A stretch of 64,000 nt of DNA from Vitrella brassicaformis CCMP3155 (GCA_001179505.1 CDMY01000635.1:186001-250000); one strand, 5' to 3'. Shown: positions 2,901-64,000, counted from the stretch's first letter. Made by a program: numbers and translations. The notes: a model not told the origin generated them from the letters alone.

Positions 2901-5730
2901 ATGTCACTGACGGGGGAAGACGGTGCCGATGCTGTCGGGTTTGTTCAGTTCTGGGGCAACTCGCCGGCCGTCAACCTCTTGGAGCACCTGCATCTTGCGC
3001 CGAATGGCGAGACAGATGCCGTGGACAGCAGCCCCATCGGCATCTTGCTCTCCGGGGCGGCTGATGTGCGGCACGACCTGCTGACGCTGACCAAGCTGCA
3101 TGGGGTCGACCTGAGAGGGCGGCAGCTGCATGTAGGGCCAAGGGCGAGGCAAAACACCCATTCATTACGTTTGGCATGCATGCATGCATGAATCTGGGTG
3201 TGGGACGTTGTGTCGTGTCGTGGTGTTGTCTGGTGCGTGCGGGTCAGGTATATCTTCATGAGAGCTCGATTGAGGTGTTGGCCCGGCACCTCCTGCTGCT
3301 GGATCTGCTCCTCAACACAGGCATCAGCATCAGAGGTGACCACACGAGCCCGACGGACGGACGGACGGACGCACCTCACAGGAGACGGAATGAAAAACGT
3401 GTGTGTGTGTGTGACTGTTGGTCCTTGACAGAGCGTGTTGAGTATTTCCTGGATTTGTTTGGTAACTGTTTGCTTCGCGACAAGACCGCCCACTATCTCA
3501 AGGCACGCACCCCACAGCTGCTCAAGTAGCCAACCAGCCAGCGACGCGAACCGAACACACATGAGTCGTGTCGTGTTGCCCTCTGGGTGCAGGTACGTTC
3601 ATGACGACACATCTCCATCGCTGCACCGCCTGATGGACCTCTCGCATCTAAAGTTCAAACACAGAGACGACCTGCAAGGCAGACAACGACGCACCACCGC
3701 ACCTTACCTGCCAGGCTGGCTGGCCTCCATCCATCCATCTTTCTGTCTGCTGTCTCGGTCTCTCTCTGTCGCAAGCAGCTGTGTTTGAGAGCTGGGTTGC
3801 ATCGGGTTGCGAAGAGGGTCGTTTCGACGTTGAGGCGTTGCGTGAGCAGCGGCTGCGAGGTCTGTACCAGACGCGGTACGACCACCGGGTCAACCTTATG
3901 GACTGGACCTACACCATGCACATCAAACCACTGGTTGGTATTCATGAATCAATCAATCGTGGACACACCAACACACAGTGGCCTGGGCGATGTGTGGAAA
4001 TGTACTCGGCGTGTCTGTGTGTGTAGGCTCCCATCATCCACTGGCTGCAGTACAAACAATTCTGTCTGACCGGTGAGACAGAGATGCCTTATCTAGCGCA
4101 TGGGTCGACGAAGACCATGTGTCTGTCCGTGTCTGTCAAGGTGTGTCGTTCGAGACTCGCCTCGCCCCCCACACCCACCCCAACCCCACCCTGGCCGCAT
4201 ATATACCAGCTAAAGATGTTAGCATGTCGTCACGAGCCACACACGACGACATGTCATGCTTGGATCAATGTGTGTCTGCATTGTGTGTGTCAGCGTCGCC
4301 GTCAGCAGAGTGTGTTGGTGCGTGGGTATTGGGGCGATGTGGTCAACTCGCCTTTCATGTCGTTCGGCATCGACACGGACACCCAAGACAAAGACCGGCT
4401 TTGGAGGACCGTCAACAAAGAACAGAGACACGTACAACTTTTCCACCCAGGCAGGGCGCCATCCACCCCTCTCTCTATGTGGGTATGTTATGTGTGTGTT
4501 GGGAACGGGACGCCAGAACGCGCAAGAGGTGTCAAAGTTCAACCTGACAGCGTGGCTGAACGAGCTCGAGACACACCAGCCCTTCCACCTACCACCGGAG
4601 AGACACGAGGAATCCGAGTGAGTGAGTGAGCGAGACATCAATGAATGAATGGGTCCATGCCATGGATGTGTCAAATGGGATGGATGTGCTGCGTGACGTG
4701 ACAGGTATCCGTATCCCTCCCCTTTGGATTCCTTGAACCCCAAAGTGGAGGAGCTCGAGCTTGATGACACTGCTCCCGTCTCACGACAGGACGGAGCCAC
4801 GTCACGGCTAGAGGTCCCATCAGGTAGGTCAGAGCAACACACAGGTACATCACATCACAGCAAGCAGTCAGTCCATGTGTGTCTGTCCACTTGTTCAGGA
4901 CTGAGTCATGTCAAGATCGTGTTTCTCACGGGCGACTTGCCCCAACTCCTCAGCAAAACCAGGTGAATCTGCCCAAGGACACACGGTCCATCCATCCACC
5001 CAGTGCAGTGCTCCCCGTTTGCTCCTCCTGTCTTTCGTGTGCAGATACGGCAGCAAGTTCGATTTGATGTATTTCGGGAACCTGGCCGTCTCGCCGCTAT
5101 TCGGGGCCACCAACCTGCTCAACAAGCCGGCTGAGCCCACCGTGGATGACAGCTCTCCAGCTGCTGCTGATGATGTGATGACGGCAGCTGACGGTGCGCC
5201 GCGGGCTGAGTGGCTGACGGGCGCCATGAAGCCCCAATGCAGAGTTGTCGTCGAATCGTTCAAGTGAGTGCGACACGGGTCGCCTTCCACAGTCAAGCCA
5301 ATGACTGTCTCTCTATCTGTCGGCTTGATGGGCGTGTCAGGTACATGGTGCACTACAAGCCATCAGTGCGCCTCAGATACCGCAGCAGACTTCTCGAGGC
5401 AGCCAGACGCATGAACTGGACACTGGCGAATGACGCTGCCGGTGGGACAACACAATGAACACCATGCCCTTAAACACACACACACACACACACACACACA
5501 CGACACACACACACGCCTCTGTCTGTCTCTGTCTGCCTGCAGCGCCTCCTGCCGAGTTTGATGCATGTGTTGACGGTCAAGGCATGAAGGAGCCACAGGC
5601 CAACGAGGTGGAGGCCAAGGCTGACACGTTCATGGTGTTTGAGGCCGCCATGAGGGGGGATGGTGTCGCAGATGTGTGTGCGGACGGGAGGGAGGAGGGG
5701 GCGGTGCGGACTATGGCTGCATCGCAGTGA
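2901..5730 (+). CDS. DNAAF3: Dynein axonemal assembly factor 3 (PF22-like)
   Basis: Exons: GFVQFWGNSPAVNL, ILLSGAADVRH, VYLHESSIEVLARHLLLL, ERVEYFLDLFGNCLL, LKFKHRDDL, LRGLYQTRYDHRVNLMDWTY, IIHWLQYKQFCLTG, RGYWGDVVNSPFMSFGI. These match the DNAAF3 family as I recall it. Confidence 0.88.
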
Positions 5731-49467: not shown

Positions 49468-49709
49468 GGCAGCCACACCTGTCGCAGATAGGCAGGTCGA
49501 CGGTAGATCATGGTAGACTGACTGATGCCATGCCGGCAGATTCGCTCGTGCAGATGAGTGGATCTTTGTGAGTAGTGAGTTGTGTCTGCTTTCATCGACA
49601 CTGGCTTATTGTAATTGCCTTGTCAATAGCTGCAACAAAAGATCTGCATGCATGCATCCCCTCCTTCAATGGGGGCGGCCCCCCGTGGCGTCTTGAAGTT
49701 GGTCTCGCG

Positions 49710-51855
49710 ATGTTTTCGAGGCCGCCAAGCGCCAAGCCGAAGCTGTATAAGGAGAAGTTGCGAGGCCACCGCCATGCCGTCGTGTATCTCTCCAAGCCAG
49801 ATGGAGCAGAAGGACGTAGGCAAAGACAAGACACTGTCACGGCGATGCGTGTATTGGCTGCCATGGCGACTGCCCTTGTGCTTCAGCTTTTCTCCTGTCC
49901 ATGGCAGCCGACGGCACACTCAGGCTATGGAACCTGCCCAAGAAGACAATGGCCAAGAAGCTGGATCTATCGCTATTGCCGGATGAGGAGGGAGAGGAAG
50001 CCGGGAGGCCCATGGCGGCTGCTGCTGTCACAATCGGGGCAAAGAGGAGGAGCCATTTGTGTGTACTGAGCTATCAACTGACCTTCGCTCTGCAACGGGC
50101 CTTCGGCGGCACGTCTGAGGGAACGATTATCCAGTGGAACCTCGAGGCAAGGATGACGAGAGAGGCAAGAGGGAGACACACATTGGTGTCTGCTTTGTTG
50201 TCATGTGTCAGAGCGGCGCTTTCATTGGTGAGTACGGCGGCCACACAAGCGGGGATGCAGTCACGGCGCTTGAGATCATCGAGCCGGACTCGTCCAAGGC
50301 TGGTGTCGAGGGCCCCAACAAAGGTGGGCGTATCTCGGAAACGACTGAGCCTGGCACTGTTGGCGCGCCTTTTCATTGCAGGCAAGATATCCTCGCTGCT
50401 CAAGACGAAGGGTCGTCTCGTCAGCGGCTCGCTCGATGGCTGTGTCCGTCTCTGGGATCTGGACGTCAAGCTGCGTCCACAGACGACGGACGCGGCCAGA
50501 CCACCGCAGCCGGAGACACAGGGAGCTGATGAAGAGGTCAGCAAAGAGACAAGCATGATGGGTCGATGCCATATCTTCTATGTCTCACAAATAGGAAATG
50601 GGGGAGGAGGCCCCGCAGGCAGCCAGTGCTGCAGGAGACTCCTCAGTCGCCCTCTCAGAAGCTCTCGACGTGACGCCAGTGTGCACTCATGTGCTGCGTC
50701 TCGCCACCCCAGTGAGCGTGGTGACGTTCAGTCCTTCCCCAGGCACCTGGCTCGGGCAGGGACCGAGAGGTGTGCTGATGGTGGGGTGCTGGGACGGGTG
50801 TCTCCGTGCTATTGACCTCGGCGGGCTGACGTGCAAAGTCACGAGGAGCCTTGTGGCTGCTCCGTTTGGCCCCGAGCCCTTCCTACCGCATCCACCGACA
50901 ACTCCTCTTACGTACAATGTCGTGTCTGACATCGGTGAAGCAGGTACGTAGCTAGGCGCACTCATGGACGAGAATGAGATTGATTGAGGTGTATTTCTCT
51001 ACCTTCAGCCGTGACGAGTCTGTGGGTGTTCGACGAAAATGCACCGCCCAGCGTAAGGCGTTCAGGCAGGCCACAGTCAGGGCCAGAGAATACATTAGAG
51101 CTAACGGTTCATTCACGTGCTCTGCCAGGACGGGGTATCACCTGCTCCAACGTCGCCGAGACAGGCGGCTGCGTCCCCGAGTGGCCTGGACAGGGGATTC
51201 GCTGGGCTCTCCGATGGACGAATCTGCAAATGGGTACTCGTGGTGAGCCTTCACTCAATGCAAAAATGGAAGAGAACATGCTGTCCGTCACACTGGGCCA
51301 TCAGGATCCATCGCTGACGGGCAAGGAGGCTGCAAAGGTGGCGGCGGCTCTGGAGGGCTTCGAGCACTCGTGGCAGGCCCACAGCGACGCCGTCACTCAC
51401 CTGGTCGTCTACGGCCGCGAGATCTACAGCGCCTCTGAAGACGGGACCATCAAGGTGTGGGACACCAAGAGTCGCCGGCTGCTGGACGACCTGCATGGGC
51501 ATGACGGCGGCATCCTCAGGATGGCCTTCAGCGACACGCTGCTCTACACGGCATCGAGAGACGCCTCAATTCGGTCGTGGGACCTGGAGGAGATGAAAAT
51601 GCGGATACGTGAGAGGGAGGAGTGCAGGGAAAACGAACTCTTCAGTCGACGGCGGGAGATCATTGACGAGCTCGAGAGCAAGTAGGACAGAGACGCGTGT
51701 GGCAGGATGATGAGACATGACTTGAATGGTGTGTTGGTTGACTTGCTTTGTTGTGGCTGCCTGCCTGCCTGCCTGCCTGCAGGAAGAAGAAGCCCAAGAA
51801 AGGCGGGGGCAAGAAGGCGGGCGGCAAGGCCAAGGGAAAGGGCAAGAAAAAGTGA
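49710..51855 (+). CDS. WD40-repeat protein with Lys/Gly-rich C-terminal tail
   Basis: GH...WD/WN repeats: LRGHRHAV, ADGTLRLWN, SGSLDGCVRLWD, AHSDAVTHL...SASEDGTIKVWD, GHDGGI...SRDASIRSWD. Tail KKKPKKGGGKKAGGKAKGKGKKK*. Confidence 0.88.
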
Positions 51856-53041: not shown

Positions 53042-53839
53042 TCACTGCTGCTTCTTGCTCTCAGCTGGGGTCTGTTGTTCCTCTGCCACATCGCCCTTCT
53101 GCGCTTCACTGGCCGCCTTCTTGCGCTCGGTGAGTTCGATCTCGTTCTTGGCCGGGGCGCTTGGCTTCGGCAGTGCCGACTGAGGGGGCGGGGGCTTCTC
53201 CTCATGACCGCCCTCCTCAAGTTTCTCGATCTCGTGCCAGAAGTAGCTGAATGTGGATGCGATGCGCCAAATGATCATCCACAAGGTGCCTGCAGGCAGA
53301 CAAGTGCAACACCTGGATATAAGGGAGCATGTGTGTGTCCTTCAGCGTGCGGCGTGCGCACATGCGAAAAGGCAGATCCACCAGTTCCTCTCAATCCGCC
53401 ATTCCTTGCCTCTGTACCTGTCATCGAACTCGACAGGCAGACCTGACACACAACACACACACGCACGCACACACGCATGAACATGGAAAGAGCGGCCATG
53501 CACGTCGGGCTCACCCGCCCTCCCGTACATCTGGTCCTTGCTCCTATCCTGGATCTTCGACAACGCATACGAGCGCGCGGCAAAGCTTAAGATCGTCACG
53601 AAGAGCTGCATGTAGCCACAACAGGACGCACAGACAAACAGACACCAGAAGGATGAATAGCAAGATCCGTGTGTGGTGCCGCTTACAAAGAAGTGGATGA
53701 CGGAAAAACGGAAGCCTCCGATGGACATCGACACGTGCCCGAGCCAGACCGCCATCCTCTGCAGTCGGCGGATGCCACACAACAGCAGTACCAAAATGAC
53801 ACCGCCGATGGGAAGAACGAAGTACGCCTCAAACTTCAT
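53042..53839 (-). CDS. BAP29/BAP31-family ER membrane protein
   Basis: Three hydrophobic helices; WRIERNWWICLFACTLWMIIWR matches the family FRAQRNxYIxGFxLxL motif; charged C-terminal tail. Confidence 0.72.
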
Positions 53840-53920: not shown

Positions 53921-54220
53921 AGAAGTGGAAAAGGCCGAGTGACGCCGAGCTTAGAAATCAAACCCATAACCGACCGACCGACCGTAACGTGCGCCAAGGT
54001 ATCCATGAACAGACAGACAGATCTTTCCCTGTGATAGGATACAGATCTATCTGACTCGCGCTACTGAGCAGATCTTCGACAAGTGTCGATGCATGCATGC
54101 TTCGCTTGCTGCATCTGGCATCTGGTGATCCCCTTTGAGATAACCCAAGCCTTCTCGTCGCCCTCATTCATCCATCGGAGATCGTCATCCCTCCCCAGGC
54201 GCCCGTCATCTAACAGGGAG

Positions 54221-57200
54221 ATGATGGCCGCCGCCTCACCGTCTGTCGAGGAGCAGTTCTCGAGGCTCTCTTTGCAAGGTCAGCAGCCGTCCCAAGACCA
54301 CGCAGATGAGGGAGTCCTCGGCTACTATTCGATGCCCACTCTTCACGGCGACAAAGTCATCTTTGTCTGTGAGGATGACCTCTGGCGAGGCACTGTCAGC
54401 GGTAGCCCTCGATGGTCACCACCGCATCGGTTGACATCCGGCCTGCAGTGCTCCTTCCCGCTGCTGAGCCCTGACGGCAAGACGGTGGCCTTCAGTGCCG
54501 AGGTGGGCGACAAGGGAGCCACGGAGGTCTTCACCATGGCCAGCAGTGGGGGGGCTATCAACCGACTGACTCATTTCGGTACCCACGCACTTAGAACAGC
54601 AGAATCGTACGAGCCATCCATCCATCTATCGAGTGTCTGTTCTGTGTCCTAGGTTCGTACGCCGCTCCCGTCGCGTGGCAGCTTGACGGCAAGAGCGTCA
54701 TCGTCACATCGACCTACGAGCAGATCAACTCCTACCACCAACACCTGTTCCGCGTCGCCGTTCCCACAGCCGACACCGACCCGACCTCGGCCCACCCCCA
54801 CCCCCTTCCTCTCAGTCTCGGCCTCGCCGACTCATGTGCTTTCGCGACCACCGGCAACGGCACACAGGATCCCTCCTCTGCTGTGCCAAGGTTGCTTGGC
54901 CGGCACACGAGTGACCCCCACATCAGTCAGTTCAAGGGCTACAAGGGAGGTGCCTCAGGAGTCATCTGGATCGACCCGCAGGGCGATGGCGAATATGCCA
55001 AGCTGGAGCTGAGGCGTCGTGGTGGTGGTGGTGGTGATAGCGAGGAGTCTCGAGAGGGCGTGAGCGTGGGGAGCCCCATGTGGTTGGGGGATAGGGTGGT
55101 GTTTGTGGCTGAGGACCTGCAGATGAAGCCCTATGTGGATGGGGACACTGCTGCGGGGGCGGGGGCGTGTGCCAACATCTTCAGCTGCAGCCTGCAGGGG
55201 GACGACGTCCGACGACACACGTTCCAAAAGTAGGCCTGTGGAACGAAACACCGAATGTATGGGACTTCTCTAGCCAGTACATCCATCGTGTGCTGGCGGG
55301 TCAGGGACCACTATGTGCGCAACCCCACCCTTGAGAGCGGCCCGGGGGCCCATCGGGTGGTTTATCATGCGGGCGGAGATCTCTTTGTGCTCGACCTGGG
55401 ACAAGACTGCCGCAGCGGTAGGCACAGATGGATACCCACCTCACCTGTGAGATTCTTCGCTGCATGTCTGTCTGCCTGTCTGTCTGTCTGTCTGTCAGTG
55501 TCAGCACCTGTCCACCTGGATTATCGGCTGTGGACGGCCCGTACCAAGCGTCAACCGCGCATCGTCCAGCCATCCGACTATCTAGAGGAATACTGCATAC
55601 ACCCGAAAGTAGCCAGCCGGGAGAGGAACGACCAACCGACCAACAAACACGACGTCGCTGTTTGGTTTCGTTCGTTCAGGGTCACCACATAGGCGTGATA
55701 GCCCGTGGTCAGCCATTTGAGATGGCTCTCTGGGAGGGACCCGCACTCCCTCTGAACCTCTCGTCGCTGCACAGGTATACTATACACCGACGTAGCTGCT
55801 CGCTACTACCCGGTCGATAGATAGGTTCCTTCCTTCAGTTATGGATCTGTCCCGTTTTGTTTTGTGTTGCCTGCCTGCCAGATGTTACGGTGCCCATTAC
55901 CTGAGCGACGGTCGCCTGGCCACCTTTTGCCTGCCACCAGACGGACCCATCCAACTCATGGTCAGTCGGTGCCGCATGTCCACGCGTGCACAGAGTCACA
56001 CAACAGCCAGTCGTCTGTTTCTTTGCTGCCTGCATCCCCTGCATCCATCTGTCAGGTTCGTTCCATGGCCGAACGCGACCCTAATGAGTGGCTGAGGGCG
56101 CTGGCAGAGGAGGAGATGCAAGAGAGCCAGGGTCAGCCGAGGGTCGAGCCCTACATTTCCGATCTCCTGCAGCCCGCCGACGCACCACCCCTCCTTCCAG
56201 TCGACCTCAGCTGGGCCGACGGCAGCACCGACCCTGTGGATGTGGGCCTGCCAGAGGATGTCGAGTCGTCGCCCACCAGCTCGTGCATTGCAATGGTCAA
56301 CCATCGCCTGGAGCTGCTGCTCATCACACTGGACGATACTGACAAGCCGCAAAGGGAGAAGGGCAAAGGCAGGGGAAAAAGTGGTAGAGATGGGGGCGGC
56401 CGTGAGTCGTGGGATGCGTGTGCGTCCCGTCGGATAGCGAGCGGCGGCGTGACCGGCAGGGTGACTGTGGTGTGCCGTGGGGAGCATGAGGGCGGCATAG
56501 GGGGCCTGGCATGGAGCCCCGACGGACAGTGGCTGGCATTCGCATATATGGTCAGCAAGTGCCAGTGAAGCGATCATTGCACCTGCCTGCGTCGGTTGGT
56601 TGGTCTGTACGTCCCGTGTACGTGTGTACGTGTGTGTCAGTCGTCGGCTGAGGCGTCCGTCATCCGGCTGTACCACGTGCCCACGGGGCAGCTGGCTGAC
56701 GTGACCAAGCCGCGGTTCAAGGACTTCTCACCCGCATTCGACCGAGGCGGCCGCTACCTCTACTTCTTATCCAACCGGGCCTTCATCACACGAGAGGTAG
56801 GTACCCAACCAAACAGCGTCCTTCTTGCCTGCCATTTGTGTGCTGATGTGATGTGTGTAGGATGAGGTGCATTTCGACCTGGGATTTGCGGGCTCCATCC
56901 GTCCGTATGCGGTGACACTGCAGCGCTCGACGCCCAGCCCGCTGAAGCGCCTCCCGACCGCACCAGCAGACGACCACGACGAGGAGGAGGAAGAATCGGA
57001 AGACGAAGACGAAGACGAAGAGGAATCGGAGGACGATGACAGCGACGACGAGGTGGGCCGATCGGTGGGAATGCGAGATAGAGAGAGAGAGAGAGAGACA
57101 CAGCGCAGGTCTGATCTGTGTTGTCTTCTTTCTTTGTGGTGTGTGCCACAGGATGGTGATGAGGGTGAGGAGGATAAGTCTGCGCCTCCCCCCGTGCTGA

Positions 57201-58243
57201 TCGACCTCGACGGCATCCACCGGCGGATACTCGAATTCCCCCTGCCTGCAGGCGACTACAGACAGGTAGGTGCTGCCACCCACCTCACCTCGTGCGTCGC
57301 GCCTGCACCTGCGTGTCCGTGTGTGTGAATGCTTGGGTCGCATCGCATTCATGCATTGCAATGCAGGTGGACAGTCTGGCCGCTGAGGGCTCTAGCGTCC
57401 GTCGCGGCGGGATAGTCTTTGTGCGTCGTCACCTCAAGGGCGGGCGGAAGGCCGATGTGCGCGAGGGGCCTCAGGAGGAAGAACAAGAGGGCAAGGGACA
57501 CCTCTTCAGGTCAGGCAGTAGCGACCCGACGGACCGACGGGAGAGAGAGAGAGAGAGAGAGAGCTCTCATAATATTATGCATTCACACATGTGTCGTGCG
57601 TGTCTTTGTGCGCTGTGTGTCTGTGCAGTTTCGACTTCAGCCGTATGAAGGAGCGGAAGCTGGCCGACGATGTGGACTCATTCCAAGTGTCACACGACGG
57701 ACGGGTATGACTCACACACAGATCAGCAACACACCGGAAAGGTACCCTGCATGGCTCTCTCTGGACTCTTCAGACCACCGCCCTGCTGTGTGAAGAAGAC
57801 GACGAGACCACACTGCGCGTCTATGAAACCGGTGAGTGGCCCGGCCGTTAATTGGGGGGTCCTGCATGTGTGCTGGTGTGTGTGCAGGTGTCAAGCCCAG
57901 CGAGGAGGACAGCGACGGTGAGGACATCGACGAGGACCAGCCGGGGAGGGAGTCGGGACTCATCGATATCGACGGCAGGATCACTCTCGAGGTCGGCAGG
58001 GAGGGGAGGGAAGGGGAGGGATGGGATGGGTGCTGCCACCATTGGATGGATGGATGGATGGATGGGCGTGTGGTGTGCAGGTGACCCCAGCGGACGAGTG
58101 GGTGCAGATGTTTGCCGAGACCTGGCGGCGGCTGGGGGAGTTCTTCTTCGACAAACACATGGGCGGACTCAACTGGAACAGAATCAAACACAAGTAGGCA
58201 TGGCATGGCATGCACAACGTCCTCACTCACACCGCCCTACCCA

Positions 58244-58275
<32 letters not shown>

Positions 58276-60562
58276 GGGGTGTGTGTGTGTGTATGTGTGT
58301 GTGTAGGTATTGGCCGCTGTTGGGTCGGCTCGGCTGTCGTCGAGAGCTGACTGACGTGATAGAGGAGATGATAAGCGAGCTGGGTGTGGGGCACACGTGG
58401 ACATACGGCAGGGGAGACGATACCGAACACAAACAGCTCCAGCACGACGACGACGCACAGGGGTTTCTCGGCGCTGACTTCGACTGGTCTGAGGAAGCGC
58501 AGGCATACCGAATCACACACATGGTATGGCTGTCTGTCTCACGGACAGGCGGATGCTCATTTCCTTCCTCTGCGCTGCGCTGCGCTGCGTGTGGTGAATG
58601 GTATGCTTTGCTGGCAGGTGTGTGGCGACGCGTGGGACGCCTGTGGGGGCGGTCCCCTGTCGGCAGTGGGTGTTGGTGAGGTCAAGGAGGGCGACTACGT
58701 CGTGGCCATCGATGGCCGCCGCCTGTCTCGACACATCACCCCACAACACACACTCAGAGACAGAGCTGGCAAAGAGGTACACACGTACAACCGGACGGAC
58801 ACACGCCCACGCATATATCAACGCCTGCCTCTTCTGCACTGCACGCGTCAGGTGTACGTGACCATTGTGCCTTCCCGCGACCTCCCCGCCTATCTGGCGT
58901 GGAAGAGCGCCGACACTCCTTCCTCTCCCTCTCCGCCCACAGCCCCACCCCCACCGGCCGCAGCTGACCGCCGGAAGGACAGGGAGAGGGCCAGCAGCAA
59001 GGATAAGGACAAGGGCGGCGGCAAAGGCAGCAAGGGCGGTGGCACCACAGGGTTCCTGACCAAGCGGCGAGACAAGAAGCGGCAAGGCGGCGGGAAGGGG
59101 CACAAGCACAAGGGCGGAGGAGGAGATGACGGTAGGGGAGGTGGTGGTGGTGGTGGTGGGAGCCGAATTGAGATGCAGATGCTCCACCCGCCGTGGCGCA
59201 CGTGAGTCACGGCTTTCTCTGACTATCTACTCACTCTGTGTGCGGCACCTGGTGAGTCGATGTGTTTGTTGTGTGTGTGTGTCGGTTTGTGTGTTGCAGA
59301 GTGCGCGTCAAGGCTGTGGGTGTGGAGTGCGACCGTGTGGGTCGGTGCAGGGACTGGGTGGAGAAGAACGGAAACACCGTGCACACACGAACCAATGGAC
59401 GAGTCGGTGAGCTGCCTGACCAGACAGACCATGTTGGCGTCTATGCCATCCATGGCCATATGTGACTCTATACCTCTCTGTGTGCCGATATGTAGGTTAC
59501 GTGCGGGTGCCCGACACAGAGAGGCTGGGGTTTGCCGAGTTCCACCGGTAGGCGGCAGACAGACAGACATCAATCACACACCACACCACACCACACACAA
59601 CCTCCCCTTCCCTCCCTGTCTCAGCTACTATCTGGTGGAGTGCCAGCGAGACGCCCTCATCGTCGATGGTACCCGCCCACCCCCCCCCACACACACACGA
59701 ACACAAAAAGCACCGCCCATCTGTCTGCTCCTGCTCTCCTCTGCTCTCTCTCTGCAAGCAGTTCGTGGCAACCTAGGTGGCTACTCGTCCGAGTTGATGC
59801 TGGAGAAGCTGCAGCGGCGCCACCTGGGGTACAACGCCCCCCGTCAGGGGCGGGGCGTCCCCACATCCTACCCCCGCCACTCGGTCGACGGCCCCATGGT
59901 CATGCTGGCAGACGAGAACGCCGGCAGCGACGCCGACGTCTGGTGCCACACATTCAAACTACTCAAGCTCGGACCACTGGTGGGGTGGGAGCGACAGACA
60001 CTGGGAGACGGACGAATGGCACCGCGCCATGCCATGGAAAACACGCGTCAACTAACTGAACTGCATGGTGTGTGTGAGTCAGGTTGGCAAGCGAACATGG
60101 GGCAGTGTGGTGTCGGTCGGTCCGTGTGACGTTGACCTGGTTGACGGCGGCACCGTGGCGGTGCCGTATGAGCACTACTTCACACACGACGTCGGCTTCG
60201 GCCTCGAAAACTGGGGGGTCGATCCGGACGTCACCGTCGAATACGCACCACAGCACTACGTATGTCCGTGTTGTGGCTACAGGACAGGATGGGATGGACG
60301 CCTTGGTGATGTGTAAGAGCACTTTTGTTGATATCTGTGTGTGGGTGTCTGTGTGAGGCAGCGGTCAGGCGTCGACCCGCAGCTTGACCGTGCTATCGAG
60401 ATGGCCATGAAGCTGCTAGACAAGGGGGACGAGGAGAGGCAGAACGTGAGAGCTCGGCTGCGAGAGTTCCCCCCCAACCCCCGGGCAGCCGTCATGTTTC
60501 CCCCGGGGGACGGAGGTGACCCCCCGTCCACACAGCAAGACAAGGACGGACGACTGATGTGA
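54221..60562 (+). CDS. Tricorn protease homolog (peptidase S41: beta-propellers, C1, PDZ, C2), with many spliceosomal introns
   Basis: GYYSMPTLHGDKVIFVCEDDLW, SPDGKTVAF, FKGYKGGASGVIW, WSPDGQWLAF, PAFDRGGRYLYFLSNR, EWVQMFAETWR, ELGVGHT, GFLGADF, EGDYVVAIDG, GYVRVPD, IVDVRGNLGG, DENAGSD, VGKRTWG, LENWGVDPD, DPQLDRAI. Confidence 0.93.
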
Positions 60563-62611: not shown

Positions 62612-64000
62612 ATGGCCACAGCTGACGCACTCCCCCTGCCGCCACCCTATGCCGCTGGCGTCTACGGCAGCACAACGATGACGGACGGGGCCGCGGCCTA
62701 TGTGGAGATGAGCGACAAGGCAGGCAGCAGCGAATTCACGCTCTGCATATCCGAGACGCCACCAACCACCGAGGCCATCCCGCCGCCGTCGGTCACGGAC
62801 GCGGACAAGGGCACGCGGATGCGGCGGACGCACCACGGCCGACGGCCTTCGAACCTCAAGGTGTCGATCCCATCCAAACTGGGGGGACAAGACGGCCAGG
62901 GCGCCAAGCTCAACGGATGGAACGGGCCGGGGGGTGCTGGTGGTGGGCCGGCTCCCAACACGCCACTGACGGCGCCTCCGCAGCAGAGTGCGTCGTTTGA
63001 CAACGGGTGCAGGGGCAACAACAGCAACAGGCGGCACGGTCCCGGGCGGAGCCATGGCGGGGTGGGGGCGGTGACGGGCAATGCGGGCCAGCAGCAGCAC
63101 ATGAATGCCAAGGGGCTCGTCAGAATGCCCACTGGTGGGGTTTACGACAATGAGGTAAGGAAGGGGAGGGAGGGGAGGGAGGGGACAGACGAGAGAGACA
63201 CCAGATAAGATACACGTTTGTTCCTGTGTGTGTGTCTTGATTTGATGTATGTCTCTGATCTGATTGATTATGTGTTGGTTCAGAGTTTGTCTGTGGAGCA
63301 CGTCCTCGCCGCCTCGCCGACGCCTCATCACTTTTTCCGTCACCATCCGGCCTACCCCAACCGCCCCCCTCCNNNNNNNNNNNNNNNNNNNNNNNNNNNN
63401 NNNNNNNNNNNNNNNNNNNNNNNNNNNNNNNNNNNNNNNNNNNNNNNNNNNNNNNNNNNNNNNNNNNNNNNNNNNNNNNNNNNNNNNNNNNNNNNNNNNN
63501 NNNNNNNNNNNNNNNNNNNNNNNNNNNNNNNNNNNNNNNNNNNNNNNNNNNNNNNNNNNNNNNNNNNNNNNNNNNNNNNNNNNNNNNNNNNNNNNNNNNN
63601 NNNNNNNNNNNNNNNNNNNNNNNNNNNNNNNNNNNNNNNNNNNNNNNNNNNNNNNNNNNNNNNNNNNNNNNNCCCTCCCCCGCCGACACCCCTCACATGC
63701 GGCCCACCCGCATTCCACCCGCCACTCCCCCTCCCCCACACCGAGCCCAACACGCCCCTGGGGCCTCTAGGATCTGACCACACACCATCCACAGCCGCCG
63801 GCGGCGGCATCAAGTGGCGACTCAACCTCGACTCGGCACTCGGCTTCGATCTTACCACTCCGCCCGTGTCGCCCATCATCCCCCACGACGGCAGCAGCGG
63901 CCATCACGGAGGCGGCGGTGCGTTCAAGAGCACCGTCTTCCCGACCACGCCGTCCCACGCCACTCCCGTGAGCCAGATATCGACCTGTGACAGCGAGACG
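62612..64000 (+). CDS. Partial low-complexity protein of unknown function (continues past window end)
   Basis: 198-aa ORF ending in a GT donor after GVYDNE; an exon resumes after ctag at about 63770 (DLTTPSTAAGGGIKWRLNLDS...). Confidence 0.55.
63373..63672. other. Assembly gap (300 N)
   Basis: N run flanked by C-rich tracts. Confidence 0.95.

What the first reader, a model, noticed from the sequence alone, without database searches (positions are those of the whole stretch)
54221..60562. Full-length tricorn protease, a prokaryotic proteasome-downstream peptidase, encoded as a heavily spliced eukaryotic gene
All tricorn modules are present in order: N-terminal propeller (MPTLHGDKVIFVCEDDLW; KGYKGG), second propeller (WSPDG, PAFD...YLYFLSNR), C1 (EWVQMF..TWR; ELGVGH, His codon 58392-58394), PDZ (GFLGAD; GDYVVAIDG) and C2 (GYVRVPD; DVRGNLGG; AGSD, Ser codon 59926-59928; GKRTWG; ENWGVDPD). 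Tricorn (S41) is established from Thermoplasma and various bacteria as a self-compartmentalising hexameric protease that degrades proteasome products together with F1/F2/F3 aminopeptidases. Eukaryotes normally use TPPII, thimet oligopeptidase and similar enzymes. The many GT-AG introns and a shared promoter motif with BAP31 argue that it is a genuine nuclear gene rather than contamination. There is no signal peptide. Inference: an ancient horizontal acquisition giving this protist a tricorn-based post-proteasomal pathway.
Basis: partly seen in the sequence, partly recalled or inferred. Interest (0 to 1): 0.8.

Follow-up and report, generated by a model that had tools for sequence, protein, structure and literature searches.

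The report
Eukaryotic tricorn protease gene in Vitrella
The coral-associated alga Vitrella brassicaformis carries and transcribes a real 24-exon nuclear gene for a full-length tricorn-type protease, an enzyme usually described as prokaryotic; the gene is not unique to this alga but belongs to an apparently undescribed group of such genes scattered across distant eukaryotes.

Summary
Window 54221-60562 (+) holds a 24-exon gene with 23 GT-AG introns and a 1435-codon reading frame. It carries all five tricorn modules in order. The model equals the public Vitrella brassicaformis protein CEM27569.1 / A0A0G4GDX5, apart from that record's 44-residue longer N-terminus. That record has only a generic name. 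Eleven introns are confirmed by RNA contigs and transcript-derived proteins, and DNA runs are collinear with the genome, so contamination is excluded.

This is not a private acquisition by this protist. In trees the protein sits in a well-supported clade, separate from about 90 bacterial sequences. Its clade-mates are a dinoflagellate (Polykrikos), a thraustochytrid (Hondaea), a choanoflagellate (Salpingoeca punica) and environmental eukaryotic contigs. One contig has an SMC2 neighbour and several have split genes. The clade shares a poly-acidic linker and a long lysine/arginine-rich loop in the PDZ domain. No bacterial donor can be named, and a cyanobacterial origin is weakly rejected. Localisation is open, because the upstream ATG would add a signal-plus-transit-like leader. 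Vitrella also differs from Thermoplasma at Ser745 (Gly) and Asp936 (Asn) and lacks the Arg131/132 loop. Activity, oligomer state and any link to the proteasome are untested.

The parts
54221..60562 (+). Tricorn-family peptidase gene, start codon to stop codon (24 exons, 1435 codons). Equals public CEM27569.1 / A0A0G4GDX5 from its residue 45.
54089..54220 (+). In-frame upstream extension used by the public model (44 codons). It has a 14-residue hydrophobic core, then a Ser/Arg-rich stretch, with Phe after a possible Ala-x-Ala-type cleavage site. It may be a bipartite plastid/ER leader or simply 5' UTR/promoter.
   Evidence: no RNA coverage here
54090..54097 (.). TGCATGCA octamer overlapping the upstream ATG. 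It is a known ApiAP2 (AP2-EXP) binding motif in Plasmodium and is enriched in this window (10 copies against 3.35 expected).
   Evidence: PMC11417369
54221..54578 (+). Exon 1 (N-terminal tail and first blades of the beta-6 propeller)
54653..55229 (+). Exon 2 (beta-6 propeller, KGYKGG motif)
55305..55417 (+). Exon 3
55499..55608 (+). Exon 4. An alternative in-frame acceptor lies 6 nt downstream at 55505.
55680..55774 (+). Exon 5 (clade motif FEMALWEGPA)
55882..55960 (+). Exon 6
56056..56550 (+). Exon 7 (beta-7 propeller with lineage-specific insertions; WSPDG)
56641..56796 (+). Exon 8 (PAFD...YLYFLSNR)
56861..57052 (+). Exon 9 (end of beta-7; start of the poly-acidic linker)
57152..57265 (+). 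Exon 10
   Evidence: intron 10 joint in RNA
57367..57509 (+). Exon 11
57629..57704 (+). Exon 12
57774..57831 (+). Exon 13
57888..57991 (+). Exon 14
58081..58193 (+). Exon 15 (Tricorn_C1 start, EWVQMF)
58307..58523 (+). Exon 16 (C1 end with catalytic His, PDZ start)
58618..58776 (+). Exon 17 (PDZ_Tricorn)
58852..59201 (+). Exon 18 (PDZ strand plus the long basic loop)
   Evidence: the RNA contig runs unspliced 58850-59007
59300..59406 (+). Exon 19
59496..59547 (+). Exon 20 (GYVRVPD)
59625..59668 (+). Exon 21
59762..59979 (+). Exon 22 (S41 core with catalytic Ser)
60083..60259 (+). Exon 23 (KRTWG, ENWG with the Glu)
60362..60562 (+). Exon 24 with stop codon
58392..58394 (+). His codon, equivalent to Thermoplasma His746. 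The preceding codon 58389-58391 is Gly where Thermoplasma and the bacteria have Ser745.
59926..59928 (+). Ser codon, equivalent to the nucleophile Ser965 (AGSD)
59833..59835 (+). Asn codon at the position of Thermoplasma Asp936 (the S1 specificity residue)
60206..60208 (+). Glu codon, equivalent to Glu1023
56954..57193 (+). Poly-acidic linker (30 Asp/Glu in the 50 residues counted), spanning the end of exon 9, intron 9 and the start of exon 10. Shared in kind by the whole eukaryote-type clade.
58870..59199 (+). 110-residue Lys/Arg/Gly-rich loop in the PDZ domain (24 K+R). Predicted disordered. The clade has 69-143 residues here, against 6-11 in most bacteria.

Best explanation
This is a functional nuclear gene of Vitrella brassicaformis for a tricorn-family (MEROPS S41B) serine peptidase. 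It has two N-terminal beta-propellers, then the C1, PDZ and C2 domains, with the Ser-His(-Glu) catalytic centre intact. It belongs to a eukaryote-associated tricorn lineage with members in a dinoflagellate, a thraustochytrid, a choanoflagellate and uncultured eukaryotes. That lineage is derived from, but distinct from, the bacterial type. It is marked by a poly-acidic linker after the second propeller and a long basic disordered loop in the PDZ domain. By inference from Thermoplasma tricorn, the protein most likely forms a self-compartmentalising oligomer. Oligopeptides would enter through a propeller channel and be cut into short pieces, so the enzyme would work downstream of ATP-dependent proteases such as the proteasome. 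It is most probably cytosolic and starts at ATG 54221/54224. Shown here: gene structure, splicing, expression, family membership, conserved catalytic residues, fold of the C-terminal half, and clade membership. Inferred: activity, oligomer state, substrate range, localisation and physiological role.
For: Gene model and intact reading frame. It is identical to public CEM27569.1. RNA joints lie at predicted introns, and DNA runs are collinear. Spliced transcript-derived proteins. Pfam Tricorn_C1, PDZ_Tricorn, Peptidase_S41 and PD40 all pass their cut-offs on the whole protein. PDB tricorn matches at E 1.3e-77 over four stretches. Ser965, His746, Glu1023 and Gly918 equivalents are conserved. The AlphaFold model of residues 930-1479 has pLDDT 79.6, and its best Foldseek hit is 1K32 at E 8e-33. 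The best full-length relative is Polykrikos kofoidii (624 bits). The eukaryote-type clade gets SH-aLRT 100 under LG+C20 in two row sets; it also appears in FastTree. The clade shares insertions. An SMC2 neighbour shows that the MDSV01 member is eukaryotic. Some environmental members are split, intron-like genes. Orthologues lack signal peptides. The upstream ATG has a weak Kozak context and overlaps a TGCATGCA motif, while ATG 54224 has A(-3)/G(+4).
Against: No enzymatic, structural or localisation data exist for any member of this clade. Vitrella has Gly at the Ser745 position and Asn at the Asp936 position, and it lacks the Arg131/Arg132 loop, so specificity and rate may differ from the archaeal enzyme. 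All clade members sit on long branches, so some long-branch attraction cannot be excluded (warnings). The 5' end of the mRNA was not covered, so the longer N-terminus with a leader-like sequence remains possible. Whether Vitrella also has TPPII or tricorn-interacting aminopeptidases was not testable.
Confidence: 0.7

Rival explanations
1. Lineage-specific horizontal transfer: Vitrella, or the chromerids alone, took the gene directly from a bacterium. A cyanobacterium or the plastid ancestor (endosymbiotic gene transfer) is one candidate donor. The gene then acquired introns.
For: The highest-scoring named hits of the word-based search are cyanobacterial and Chloroflexota tricorn homologues (E about 1e-190, 30-34% identity). 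No Chromera or apicomplexan orthologue appeared in any search.
Against: The best full-length BLAST hit is a dinoflagellate protein. Vitrella groups with eukaryotic sequences with SH-aLRT 100, apart from all bacteria, and the cyanobacteria sit deep inside the bacterial group. Forcing Vitrella together with the cyanobacteria costs 75.5 log-likelihood units, with p-AU 0.039. The clade shares an acidic linker and a basic PDZ loop.
Confidence: 0.1
2. Plastid (or secretory-pathway) tricorn: translation starts at ATG 54089. The 44 extra residues act as a bipartite signal plus transit peptide, so the enzyme degrades peptides in the complex plastid rather than in the cytosol.
For: The public model uses this ATG. 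The extension has a 14-residue hydrophobic core (mean hydropathy 2.0), followed by a Ser/Arg-rich, almost acid-free stretch, with Phe right after a possible cleavage site. Chromerid plastid proteins use exactly this kind of signal, with Phe at +1 (PMC6668581).
Against: The ATG has a poor context (T at -3, C at +4) and lies inside a TGCATGCA promoter-type motif, about 250 nt from the divergent upstream gene; ATG 54224 has the optimal A(-3)/G(+4). Polykrikos, P0104 and Hondaea orthologues have no hydrophobic N-terminus. There is no cyanobacterial affinity. The supplementary files of the chromerid localisation study (PMC6668581) hold no match to this protein's accessions or to tricorn/S41 terms.
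Confidence: 0.28
3. Catalytically weakened or re-purposed tricorn-like protein: the scaffold is kept for a non-proteolytic or much-altered role, because helper residues of the archaeal active site are replaced.
For: The Ser745 equivalent is Gly in Vitrella and P0104. The Asp936 equivalent is Asn. The Arg131/132 loop is missing. There are large disordered charged insertions.
Against: The nucleophile Ser, His, Glu and the oxyanion-hole Gly are all conserved, and they are invariant across the clade. Other clade members keep Ser745. The bacterial relatives also lack the Arg loop. The frame is intact over 24 exons and the gene is expressed.
Confidence: 0.12
4. Artefact: bacterial contamination or a mis-assembly placed in the algal genome.
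For: The family is described as prokaryotic in the literature (PMC1586193, PMC5567314).
Against: There are 23 spliceosomal GT-AG introns, 11 of them seen removed in RNA. DNA contigs from several runs are collinear with the window. GC content and neighbouring intron-containing genes are typical of the window.
Confidence: 0.01

Closest known systems
Tricorn protease of Thermoplasma acidophilum (PDB 1K32, 1N6D-F; MEROPS S41.005)
   Same: Same five-domain order. The sequence matches at E 1.3e-77 over all domains. The Ser965, His746, Glu1023 and Gly918 equivalents are conserved. The predicted C-terminal half superposes on 1K32 (Foldseek E 8e-33).
   Different: Only about 26% identity in the structural alignment. 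Ser745 is Gly and Asp936 is Asn. The Arg131/Arg132 loop that anchors the substrate C-terminus is absent. The protein is about 360 residues longer, owing to an acidic linker, a basic PDZ loop and propeller insertions. The gene is nuclear and has many introns. Hexamer or capsid formation and partner aminopeptidases are unknown.
Bacterial tricorn homologues ('S41 family peptidase / tricorn protease' of Chloroflexota, Cyanobacteriota, Planctomycetota, Poribacteria and others)
   Same: These are the closest non-eukaryotic relatives (E about 1e-190; 37-41% identity in aligned columns). They have the same short loop in place of the Arg131/132 segment.
   Different: They are separated from the Vitrella clade by a fully supported branch. 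They keep Ser745 and Asp936. Their PDZ loop is only 6-11 residues, apart from independent acidic expansions in some Chloroflexota.
Eukaryotic tricorn-like proteins: Polykrikos kofoidii EP00927_P048752, Hondaea fermentalgiana 'Tricorn protease-like', Salpingoeca punica EP00053_P015114, and environmental P0104 / MDSV01 contigs
   Same: Same clade, with the same acidic linker and basic PDZ loop and shared motifs (FEMALWEGPA-type, DEN-x-x-SD).
   Different: Only 28-37% identical to Vitrella. Most keep Ser745. None has the hydrophobic N-terminal extension of the public Vitrella model. None has been studied experimentally.
Tripeptidyl peptidase II (S8), the usual eukaryotic post-proteasomal giant peptidase
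   Same: The proposed role is the same: a giant oligomeric peptidase trimming proteasome products.
   Different: It has an unrelated subtilisin fold and is not homologous. Its presence in Vitrella was not tested here.
C-terminal processing peptidases (S41A: CtpA, CtpB, Prc, D1 protease)
   Same: They share the S41 catalytic domain plus a PDZ domain (Foldseek hits at E 1e-16 to 1e-12; phmmer hit to the D1 protease at 4.8e-07).
   Different: They use a Ser-Lys dyad. They have no propellers and no C1 domain, and they are far weaker matches than tricorn.

Membership tests
Tricorn protease family (MEROPS S41B) | Domain order: beta-6 propeller, beta-7 propeller, C1, PDZ, C2 in one chain | tested here: met
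   Pfam Tricorn_C1 (58.8 bits), PDZ_Tricorn (56.5), Peptidase_S41 (73.6) and PD40 on P0151. The phmmer alignment to 1N6D covers chain residues 45-303, 435-562, 680-831 and 853-1065.
Tricorn protease family (MEROPS S41B) | Catalytic Ser965 nucleophile and His746 base (a Ser-His centre rather than the Ser-Lys dyad of S41A) | tested here: met
   The Ser codon is 59926-59928 in AGSD and the His codon is 58392-58394. Both align to the Thermoplasma residues and are invariant in the clade.
Tricorn protease family (MEROPS S41B) | Glu1023 and the oxyanion-hole Gly918/Asp966 | tested here: met
   Glu at 60206-60208 in ENWG, Gly at 59779-59781, and Asp following the Ser.
Tricorn protease family (MEROPS S41B) | Ser745, which orients His746 (role stated from my knowledge of Brandstetter et al. 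2001, not checked here) | tested here: not met
   It is Gly (codon 58389-58391) in Vitrella and P0104. It is Ser in the other five clade members (Polykrikos, S. punica, P0030, Hondaea, MDSV01) and in the bacteria.
Tricorn protease family (MEROPS S41B) | Arg131/Arg132 anchor for the substrate C-terminus and Asp936 in the S1 pocket (features of the Thermoplasma enzyme) | tested here: not met
   A 7-residue gap replaces the GRRMF loop; this is also so in the bacterial relatives. Asp936 is Asn (codon 59833-59835). These residues define specificity rather than family membership.
Tricorn protease family (MEROPS S41B) | Tricorn fold of the C1-PDZ-C2 half | tested here: met
   The AlphaFold model has pLDDT 79.6 and pTM 0.75. 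Foldseek's first hit is 1K32_A at E 8.3e-33 and TMq 0.62, although about 90 of the 550 residues are disordered.
Tricorn protease family (MEROPS S41B) | Homohexamer (720 kDa), higher-order capsids, and peptidase activity on oligopeptides | not testable with these tools
   Needs expression, assay and cryo-EM.
Tricorn protease family (MEROPS S41B) | Cooperation with the interacting aminopeptidases F1 (S33) and F2/F3 (M1) | not tested
   No tool searches the rest of the Vitrella genome. The notes of this scan hold nothing on the point.
Recent bacterium-to-Vitrella horizontal transfer | The gene is nested within one bacterial clade and absent from related eukaryotes | tested here: not met
   It forms a clade with eukaryotic sequences, split from all bacteria (SH-aLRT 100). 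A dinoflagellate orthologue exists. The cyanobacterial grouping is rejected at p-AU 0.039.
Plastid-targeted protein of a complex red plastid (bipartite leader) | N-terminal signal peptide followed by a transit peptide, often with Phe at +1 | tested here: inconclusive
   The pattern is present only if ATG 54089 is used. The start codon is unresolved because no RNA covers the 5' end. Sequence context favours ATG 54221/54224.

The most novel reading that the evidence does not exclude
Tricorn was not simply lost at the origin of eukaryotes. A distinct eukaryotic tricorn lineage, marked by a poly-acidic linker and a long basic, NLS-like disordered loop in the PDZ domain, was present before alveolates, stramenopiles and choanoflagellates diverged, and has survived patchily. 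If so, some protists run a tricorn-based peptide-degradation route, possibly with a eukaryote-specific localisation or assembly mode, beside or instead of TPPII.
Probability: 0.25. Interest if true: 0.7.

Novelty: new member of a known kind. Interest (0 to 1): 0.5.

Why it matters
Papers in the library describe tricorn as prokaryotic and as lost by the ancestral eukaryote, with TPPII as the eukaryotic counterpart (PMC1586193, PMC5567314). Here a complete, spliced, expressed tricorn gene is documented in a relative of the apicomplexan parasites. It turns out to be one of a set of eukaryotic tricorn genes with their own shared insertions. This gives a concrete, testable system for three questions. 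Do some eukaryotes use a tricorn-type giant peptidase after the proteasome? How does the enzyme work without the archaeal specificity residues? How was the gene distributed among eukaryotes, by ancient inheritance with loss or by transfers? It is not a new kind of enzyme, and the sequences are already in public databases under generic names.

Tried and rejected
1. Bacterial contamination is rejected by introns seen spliced in RNA.
2. A cyanobacterial (endosymbiotic) origin was suggested by the named top hits. It is rejected by the trees and, weakly, by the AU test (p 0.039).
3. Insert-bearing Chloroflexota sequences (P0200, P0210, P0211, P0231, P0011) were tested as the bacterial sister group of the clade. 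They sit inside Chloroflexota clades, so their loop expansions are independent.
4. A hidden intron inside exon 18 (donor at 58899) would remove the basic loop. It is not used in the RNA contig that runs 58850-59007, and the loop is shared by the clade.
5. A search for short fragments of other eukaryotic orthologues with the C-terminal transcript protein found only environmental or bacterial pieces.
6. The ESM Atlas look-alike search gave only large bacterial clusters.
7. Neither dinoflagellate spliced leader nor poly-A tail was found on the mRNA-like contig L083.
8. Pfam on two ORF pieces of the upstream divergent gene gave no BAP31 hit.
9. The supplements of the chromerid localisation paper hold no match to this protein's accessions or to tricorn/S41 terms.
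10. Literature searches found no paper on eukaryotic tricorn. Most 'tricorn' hits with algae are the species name 'tricornutum'.
11. One reference to the MDSV01 tRNA-synthetase ORF was in the wrong frame and was dropped.

Full report
**Organism and region.** I confirmed this. The protein encoded here is letter-for-letter the NCBI protein CEM27569.1 / UniProt A0A0G4GDX5 of V. brassicaformis CCMP3155. That record is annotated only as 'unnamed protein product' or 'Tail specific protease domain-containing protein'. The window has 54-63% GC throughout and shows no compositional break at the gene.

**Observation.** I read the junctions by eye on three-frame displays. This gave a model of 24 exons and 23 introns of 56-119 nt. 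All introns are GT-AG, the CDS is 4308 nt, there is no internal stop, the ATG is at 54221 and the TGA is at 60560-60562. The model is identical to the public protein from its residue 45 onward. The public model merely starts at an in-frame ATG at 54089.

**Expression and splicing.**
- One run that behaves as RNA (X1) has contigs that join exactly across introns 10, 12, 13, 14, 16, 17, 19, 21 and 22.
- The same run reads straight through the first 155 nt of exon 18.
- A DNA run (X2) is collinear with the genome.
- An MMETSP transcript protein (P0152) equals spliced exons 22-24.
- A JGI transcript-derived protein (P0001) equals spliced exons 19-23, followed by a retained intron 23.

Eleven of the 23 introns are therefore confirmed, and contamination is excluded. 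The 5' end has no RNA coverage.

**Family membership.**
- Pfam finds Peptidase_S41, Tricorn_C1, PDZ_Tricorn and PD40 above threshold on the whole protein (exon pieces).
- phmmer against PDB sequences gives Thermoplasma tricorn (1N6D/1K32) at E 1.3e-77. The aligned stretches cover the beta-6 propeller, the beta-7 propeller, C1/PDZ and C2.
- From these alignments, the equivalents of Ser965, Asp966, His746, Glu1023 and Gly918 are conserved.
- Ser745 is Gly and Asp936 is Asn. The loop carrying Arg131/Arg132 is replaced by a 7-residue gap.
- The bacterial relatives also lack that loop, but they keep Ser745 and Asp936.
- An AlphaFold model of residues 930-1479 of the public protein has mean pLDDT 79.6. 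Its best Foldseek hit in the PDB is 1K32 (E 8.3e-33, TMq 0.62), well ahead of the CtpA/CtpB/Prc-type S41A enzymes.
- The only long low-confidence stretch in the model is the basic PDZ loop.

**Relatives.**
- The 72-residue catalytic exon was searched against 1.84 billion cluster representatives. It found only itself above 61% identity.
- The full-length word-based search gave bacterial tricorn homologues as the best hits. Named examples are Leptolyngbyaceae, Symploca, Ktedonobacteria and Chloroflexota, at E about 1e-190 and 30-34% identity. Hondaea fermentalgiana 'Tricorn protease-like' was the only named eukaryote.
- Re-scoring everything fetched with BLAST showed that the best full-length match is P0079 (624 bits). 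This is a transcriptome protein of the dinoflagellate Polykrikos kofoidii.
- Another hit, P0010, is from the choanoflagellate Salpingoeca punica.

**Phylogeny.**
- I fetched 80 bacterial loci with organism names and built trees.
- FastTree on 99 rows, then IQ-TREE LG+C20 (PMSF) on 64 rows and on 42 rows, all separate a eukaryote-type group from every bacterial sequence. SH-aLRT is 100 in both IQ-TREE runs.
- The group holds Vitrella, Polykrikos, the mRNA-like environmental contig P0104, S. punica, P0030, Hondaea and the MDSV01 sequences.
- Inside the group, Vitrella joins Polykrikos and P0104 (SH-aLRT 81-88). This fits their shared alveolate (myzozoan) ancestry.
- Cyanobacterial sequences form a clade deep within the bacterial group. 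Forcing Vitrella to join them costs 75.5 log-likelihood units, with p-AU 0.039.
- The members have long branches, so I looked for independent characters, and found two.
- First, the PDZ loop between the two conserved strands is 69-143 residues long and rich in Lys/Arg in the eukaryote-type sequences. It is 6-11 residues in most bacteria.
- Second, the linker after the second propeller is strongly poly-acidic in all clade members.
- A few Chloroflexota have 22-61-residue acidic or Ala/Pro-rich expansions of the same loop. They fall inside Chloroflexota clades, so those expansions are independent.

**Is the clade really eukaryotic?** Five lines of evidence say yes.
- Vitrella has spliced introns.
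- Polykrikos and S. punica come from eukaryote transcriptome sets.
- Hondaea is a nuclear genome annotation.
- On the MDSV01 metagenome contig the tricorn gene lies 6 kb from a gene whose best PDB match is condensin SMC2 (E 1.5e-125), against 65 bits for bacterial Smc.
- A clade-versus-bacteria HMM contrast picks out further environmental loci in which the gene is broken into 3-8 ORF pieces, as expected for introns: L084, L104 and L121-L125.

A group of marine contigs (L101-L103, L107-L117, L119; 44-47% GC) carries single ORFs of about 1300-1420 residues. In a FastTree-only analysis, the three of these contigs placed in the tree (L102, L108, L119) are sister to the MDSV01 group.

**Origin.** The gene is of the bacterial type. 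It scores 665 bits against bacteria and 265 bits against Thermoplasma. No donor phylum can be named. The acquisition is older than Vitrella, going back at least to the common ancestor with dinoflagellates if the clade is taken at face value. I could not include archaeal sequences in the trees. The distribution found is patchy. No Chromera, apicomplexan, plant, animal or fungal orthologue surfaced, but the searches have length and word-sharing limits.

**Localisation.**
None of the orthologues has a hydrophobic N-terminus.
- With the public start codon (54089; T at -3, C at +4), 44 residues are added.
- These are a 14-residue hydrophobic core, a possible cleavage site followed by Phe, and then a Ser/Arg-rich segment.
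- This is the pattern of chromerid bipartite plastid leaders (PMC6668581).
- That ATG overlaps a TGCATGCA octamer. The motif is enriched in the window (10 copies against 3.35 expected, reached in 0 of 100 shuffles).
- In Plasmodium this motif is known as an ApiAP2 binding site (PMC11417369).
- The motif lies about 250 nt from the start of a divergent upstream gene.

I therefore favour the short, cytosolic form at about 0.6-0.7, but this is inference.

**Mechanism.** By homology, substrates would be oligopeptides threaded through a propeller channel to a Ser-His-Glu site buried in an oligomeric cage. Products would leave through the other propeller. This follows from the Thermoplasma structure and biochemistry (Brandstetter et al. 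2001, cited from memory). The Arg131/132 anchor is lost and Asp936 is replaced. This suggests that the preference for basic P1 residues and the di-/tripeptidyl-carboxypeptidase register are not conserved. The Gly at the Ser745 position may lower catalytic efficiency. The disordered basic loop and the acidic linker are clade-specific additions of unknown role. Possible roles are nuclear import, electrostatic assembly or regulation; these are speculation.

**Novelty.** Papers in the library treat tricorn as prokaryotic. One says it was 'lost by the ancestral eukaryote' (PMC1586193). Another calls it 'prokaryotic tricorn peptidase (subfamily 41B)' (PMC5567314). Five full-text searches found no paper on a eukaryotic tricorn. 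The sequences themselves are public, and one (Hondaea) is already named 'Tricorn protease-like'. The finding is therefore a new, and apparently undescribed, eukaryotic branch of a known enzyme family. It is not a new kind of system.

Noticed in passing
window, 10 sites (e.g. 3177-3188, 49645-49656, 54090-54097): The palindromic octamer TGCATGCA occurs 10 times against 3.35 expected (0 of 100 shuffles reach 10). In Plasmodium it is a known ApiAP2 (AP2-EXP) binding motif. One copy sits in the short divergent intergenic region upstream of the tricorn gene.
   Followed up: partly
window 53042-53839 (-): A divergent upstream gene starts about 250-380 nt from the tricorn start and has a hydrophobic N-terminus. 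Pfam gave no hit on two of its ORF pieces, so the name is unconfirmed.
   Followed up: partly
window 55497-55504: Intron 3 has two in-frame AG acceptors 6 nt apart (NAGNAG-like; the exon could start at 55499 or 55505). The public model uses 55499, and no RNA contig covers the site.
   Followed up: no
window about 63300-63650: A run of N (an assembly gap) shows as long X stretches in the ORF translations near the window's end.
   Followed up: no
window 49901-51685 (+): ORF pieces with WD40-like repeats (motifs such as IKVWD and IRSWD) point to an intron-containing WD-repeat gene upstream.
   Followed up: no
L084:1313-2641 (Logan SRR31360864 contig, 71% GC): An unidentified eukaryote-type tricorn gene is broken into many short ORFs (likely introns). 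It lies next to two LSDAT-domain genes and a WD40 gene.
   Followed up: partly
L101-L103, L107-L117, L119 (marine and estuarine metagenome contigs, 44-47% GC): An abundant environmental group of single-ORF tricorn genes of about 1300-1420 residues. In a FastTree-only analysis, the three placed in the tree (L102, L108, L119) branch inside the eukaryote-type clade, next to the MDSV01 group. The host organism is unknown.
   Followed up: partly
P0210, P0011, P0211, P0200 (Chloroflexota-type tricorns): Some Chloroflexota tricorns have independently expanded the same PDZ loop by 22-61 residues (acidic or Ala/Pro-rich). This loop seems to tolerate insertions.
   Followed up: yes
L082:1-2404 (MDSV01138150.1): A 68% GC, intron-poor environmental eukaryote contig carries condensin SMC2, a GT2 glycosyltransferase and a class I tRNA synthetase around its tricorn gene. 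The organism was not identified.
   Followed up: partly
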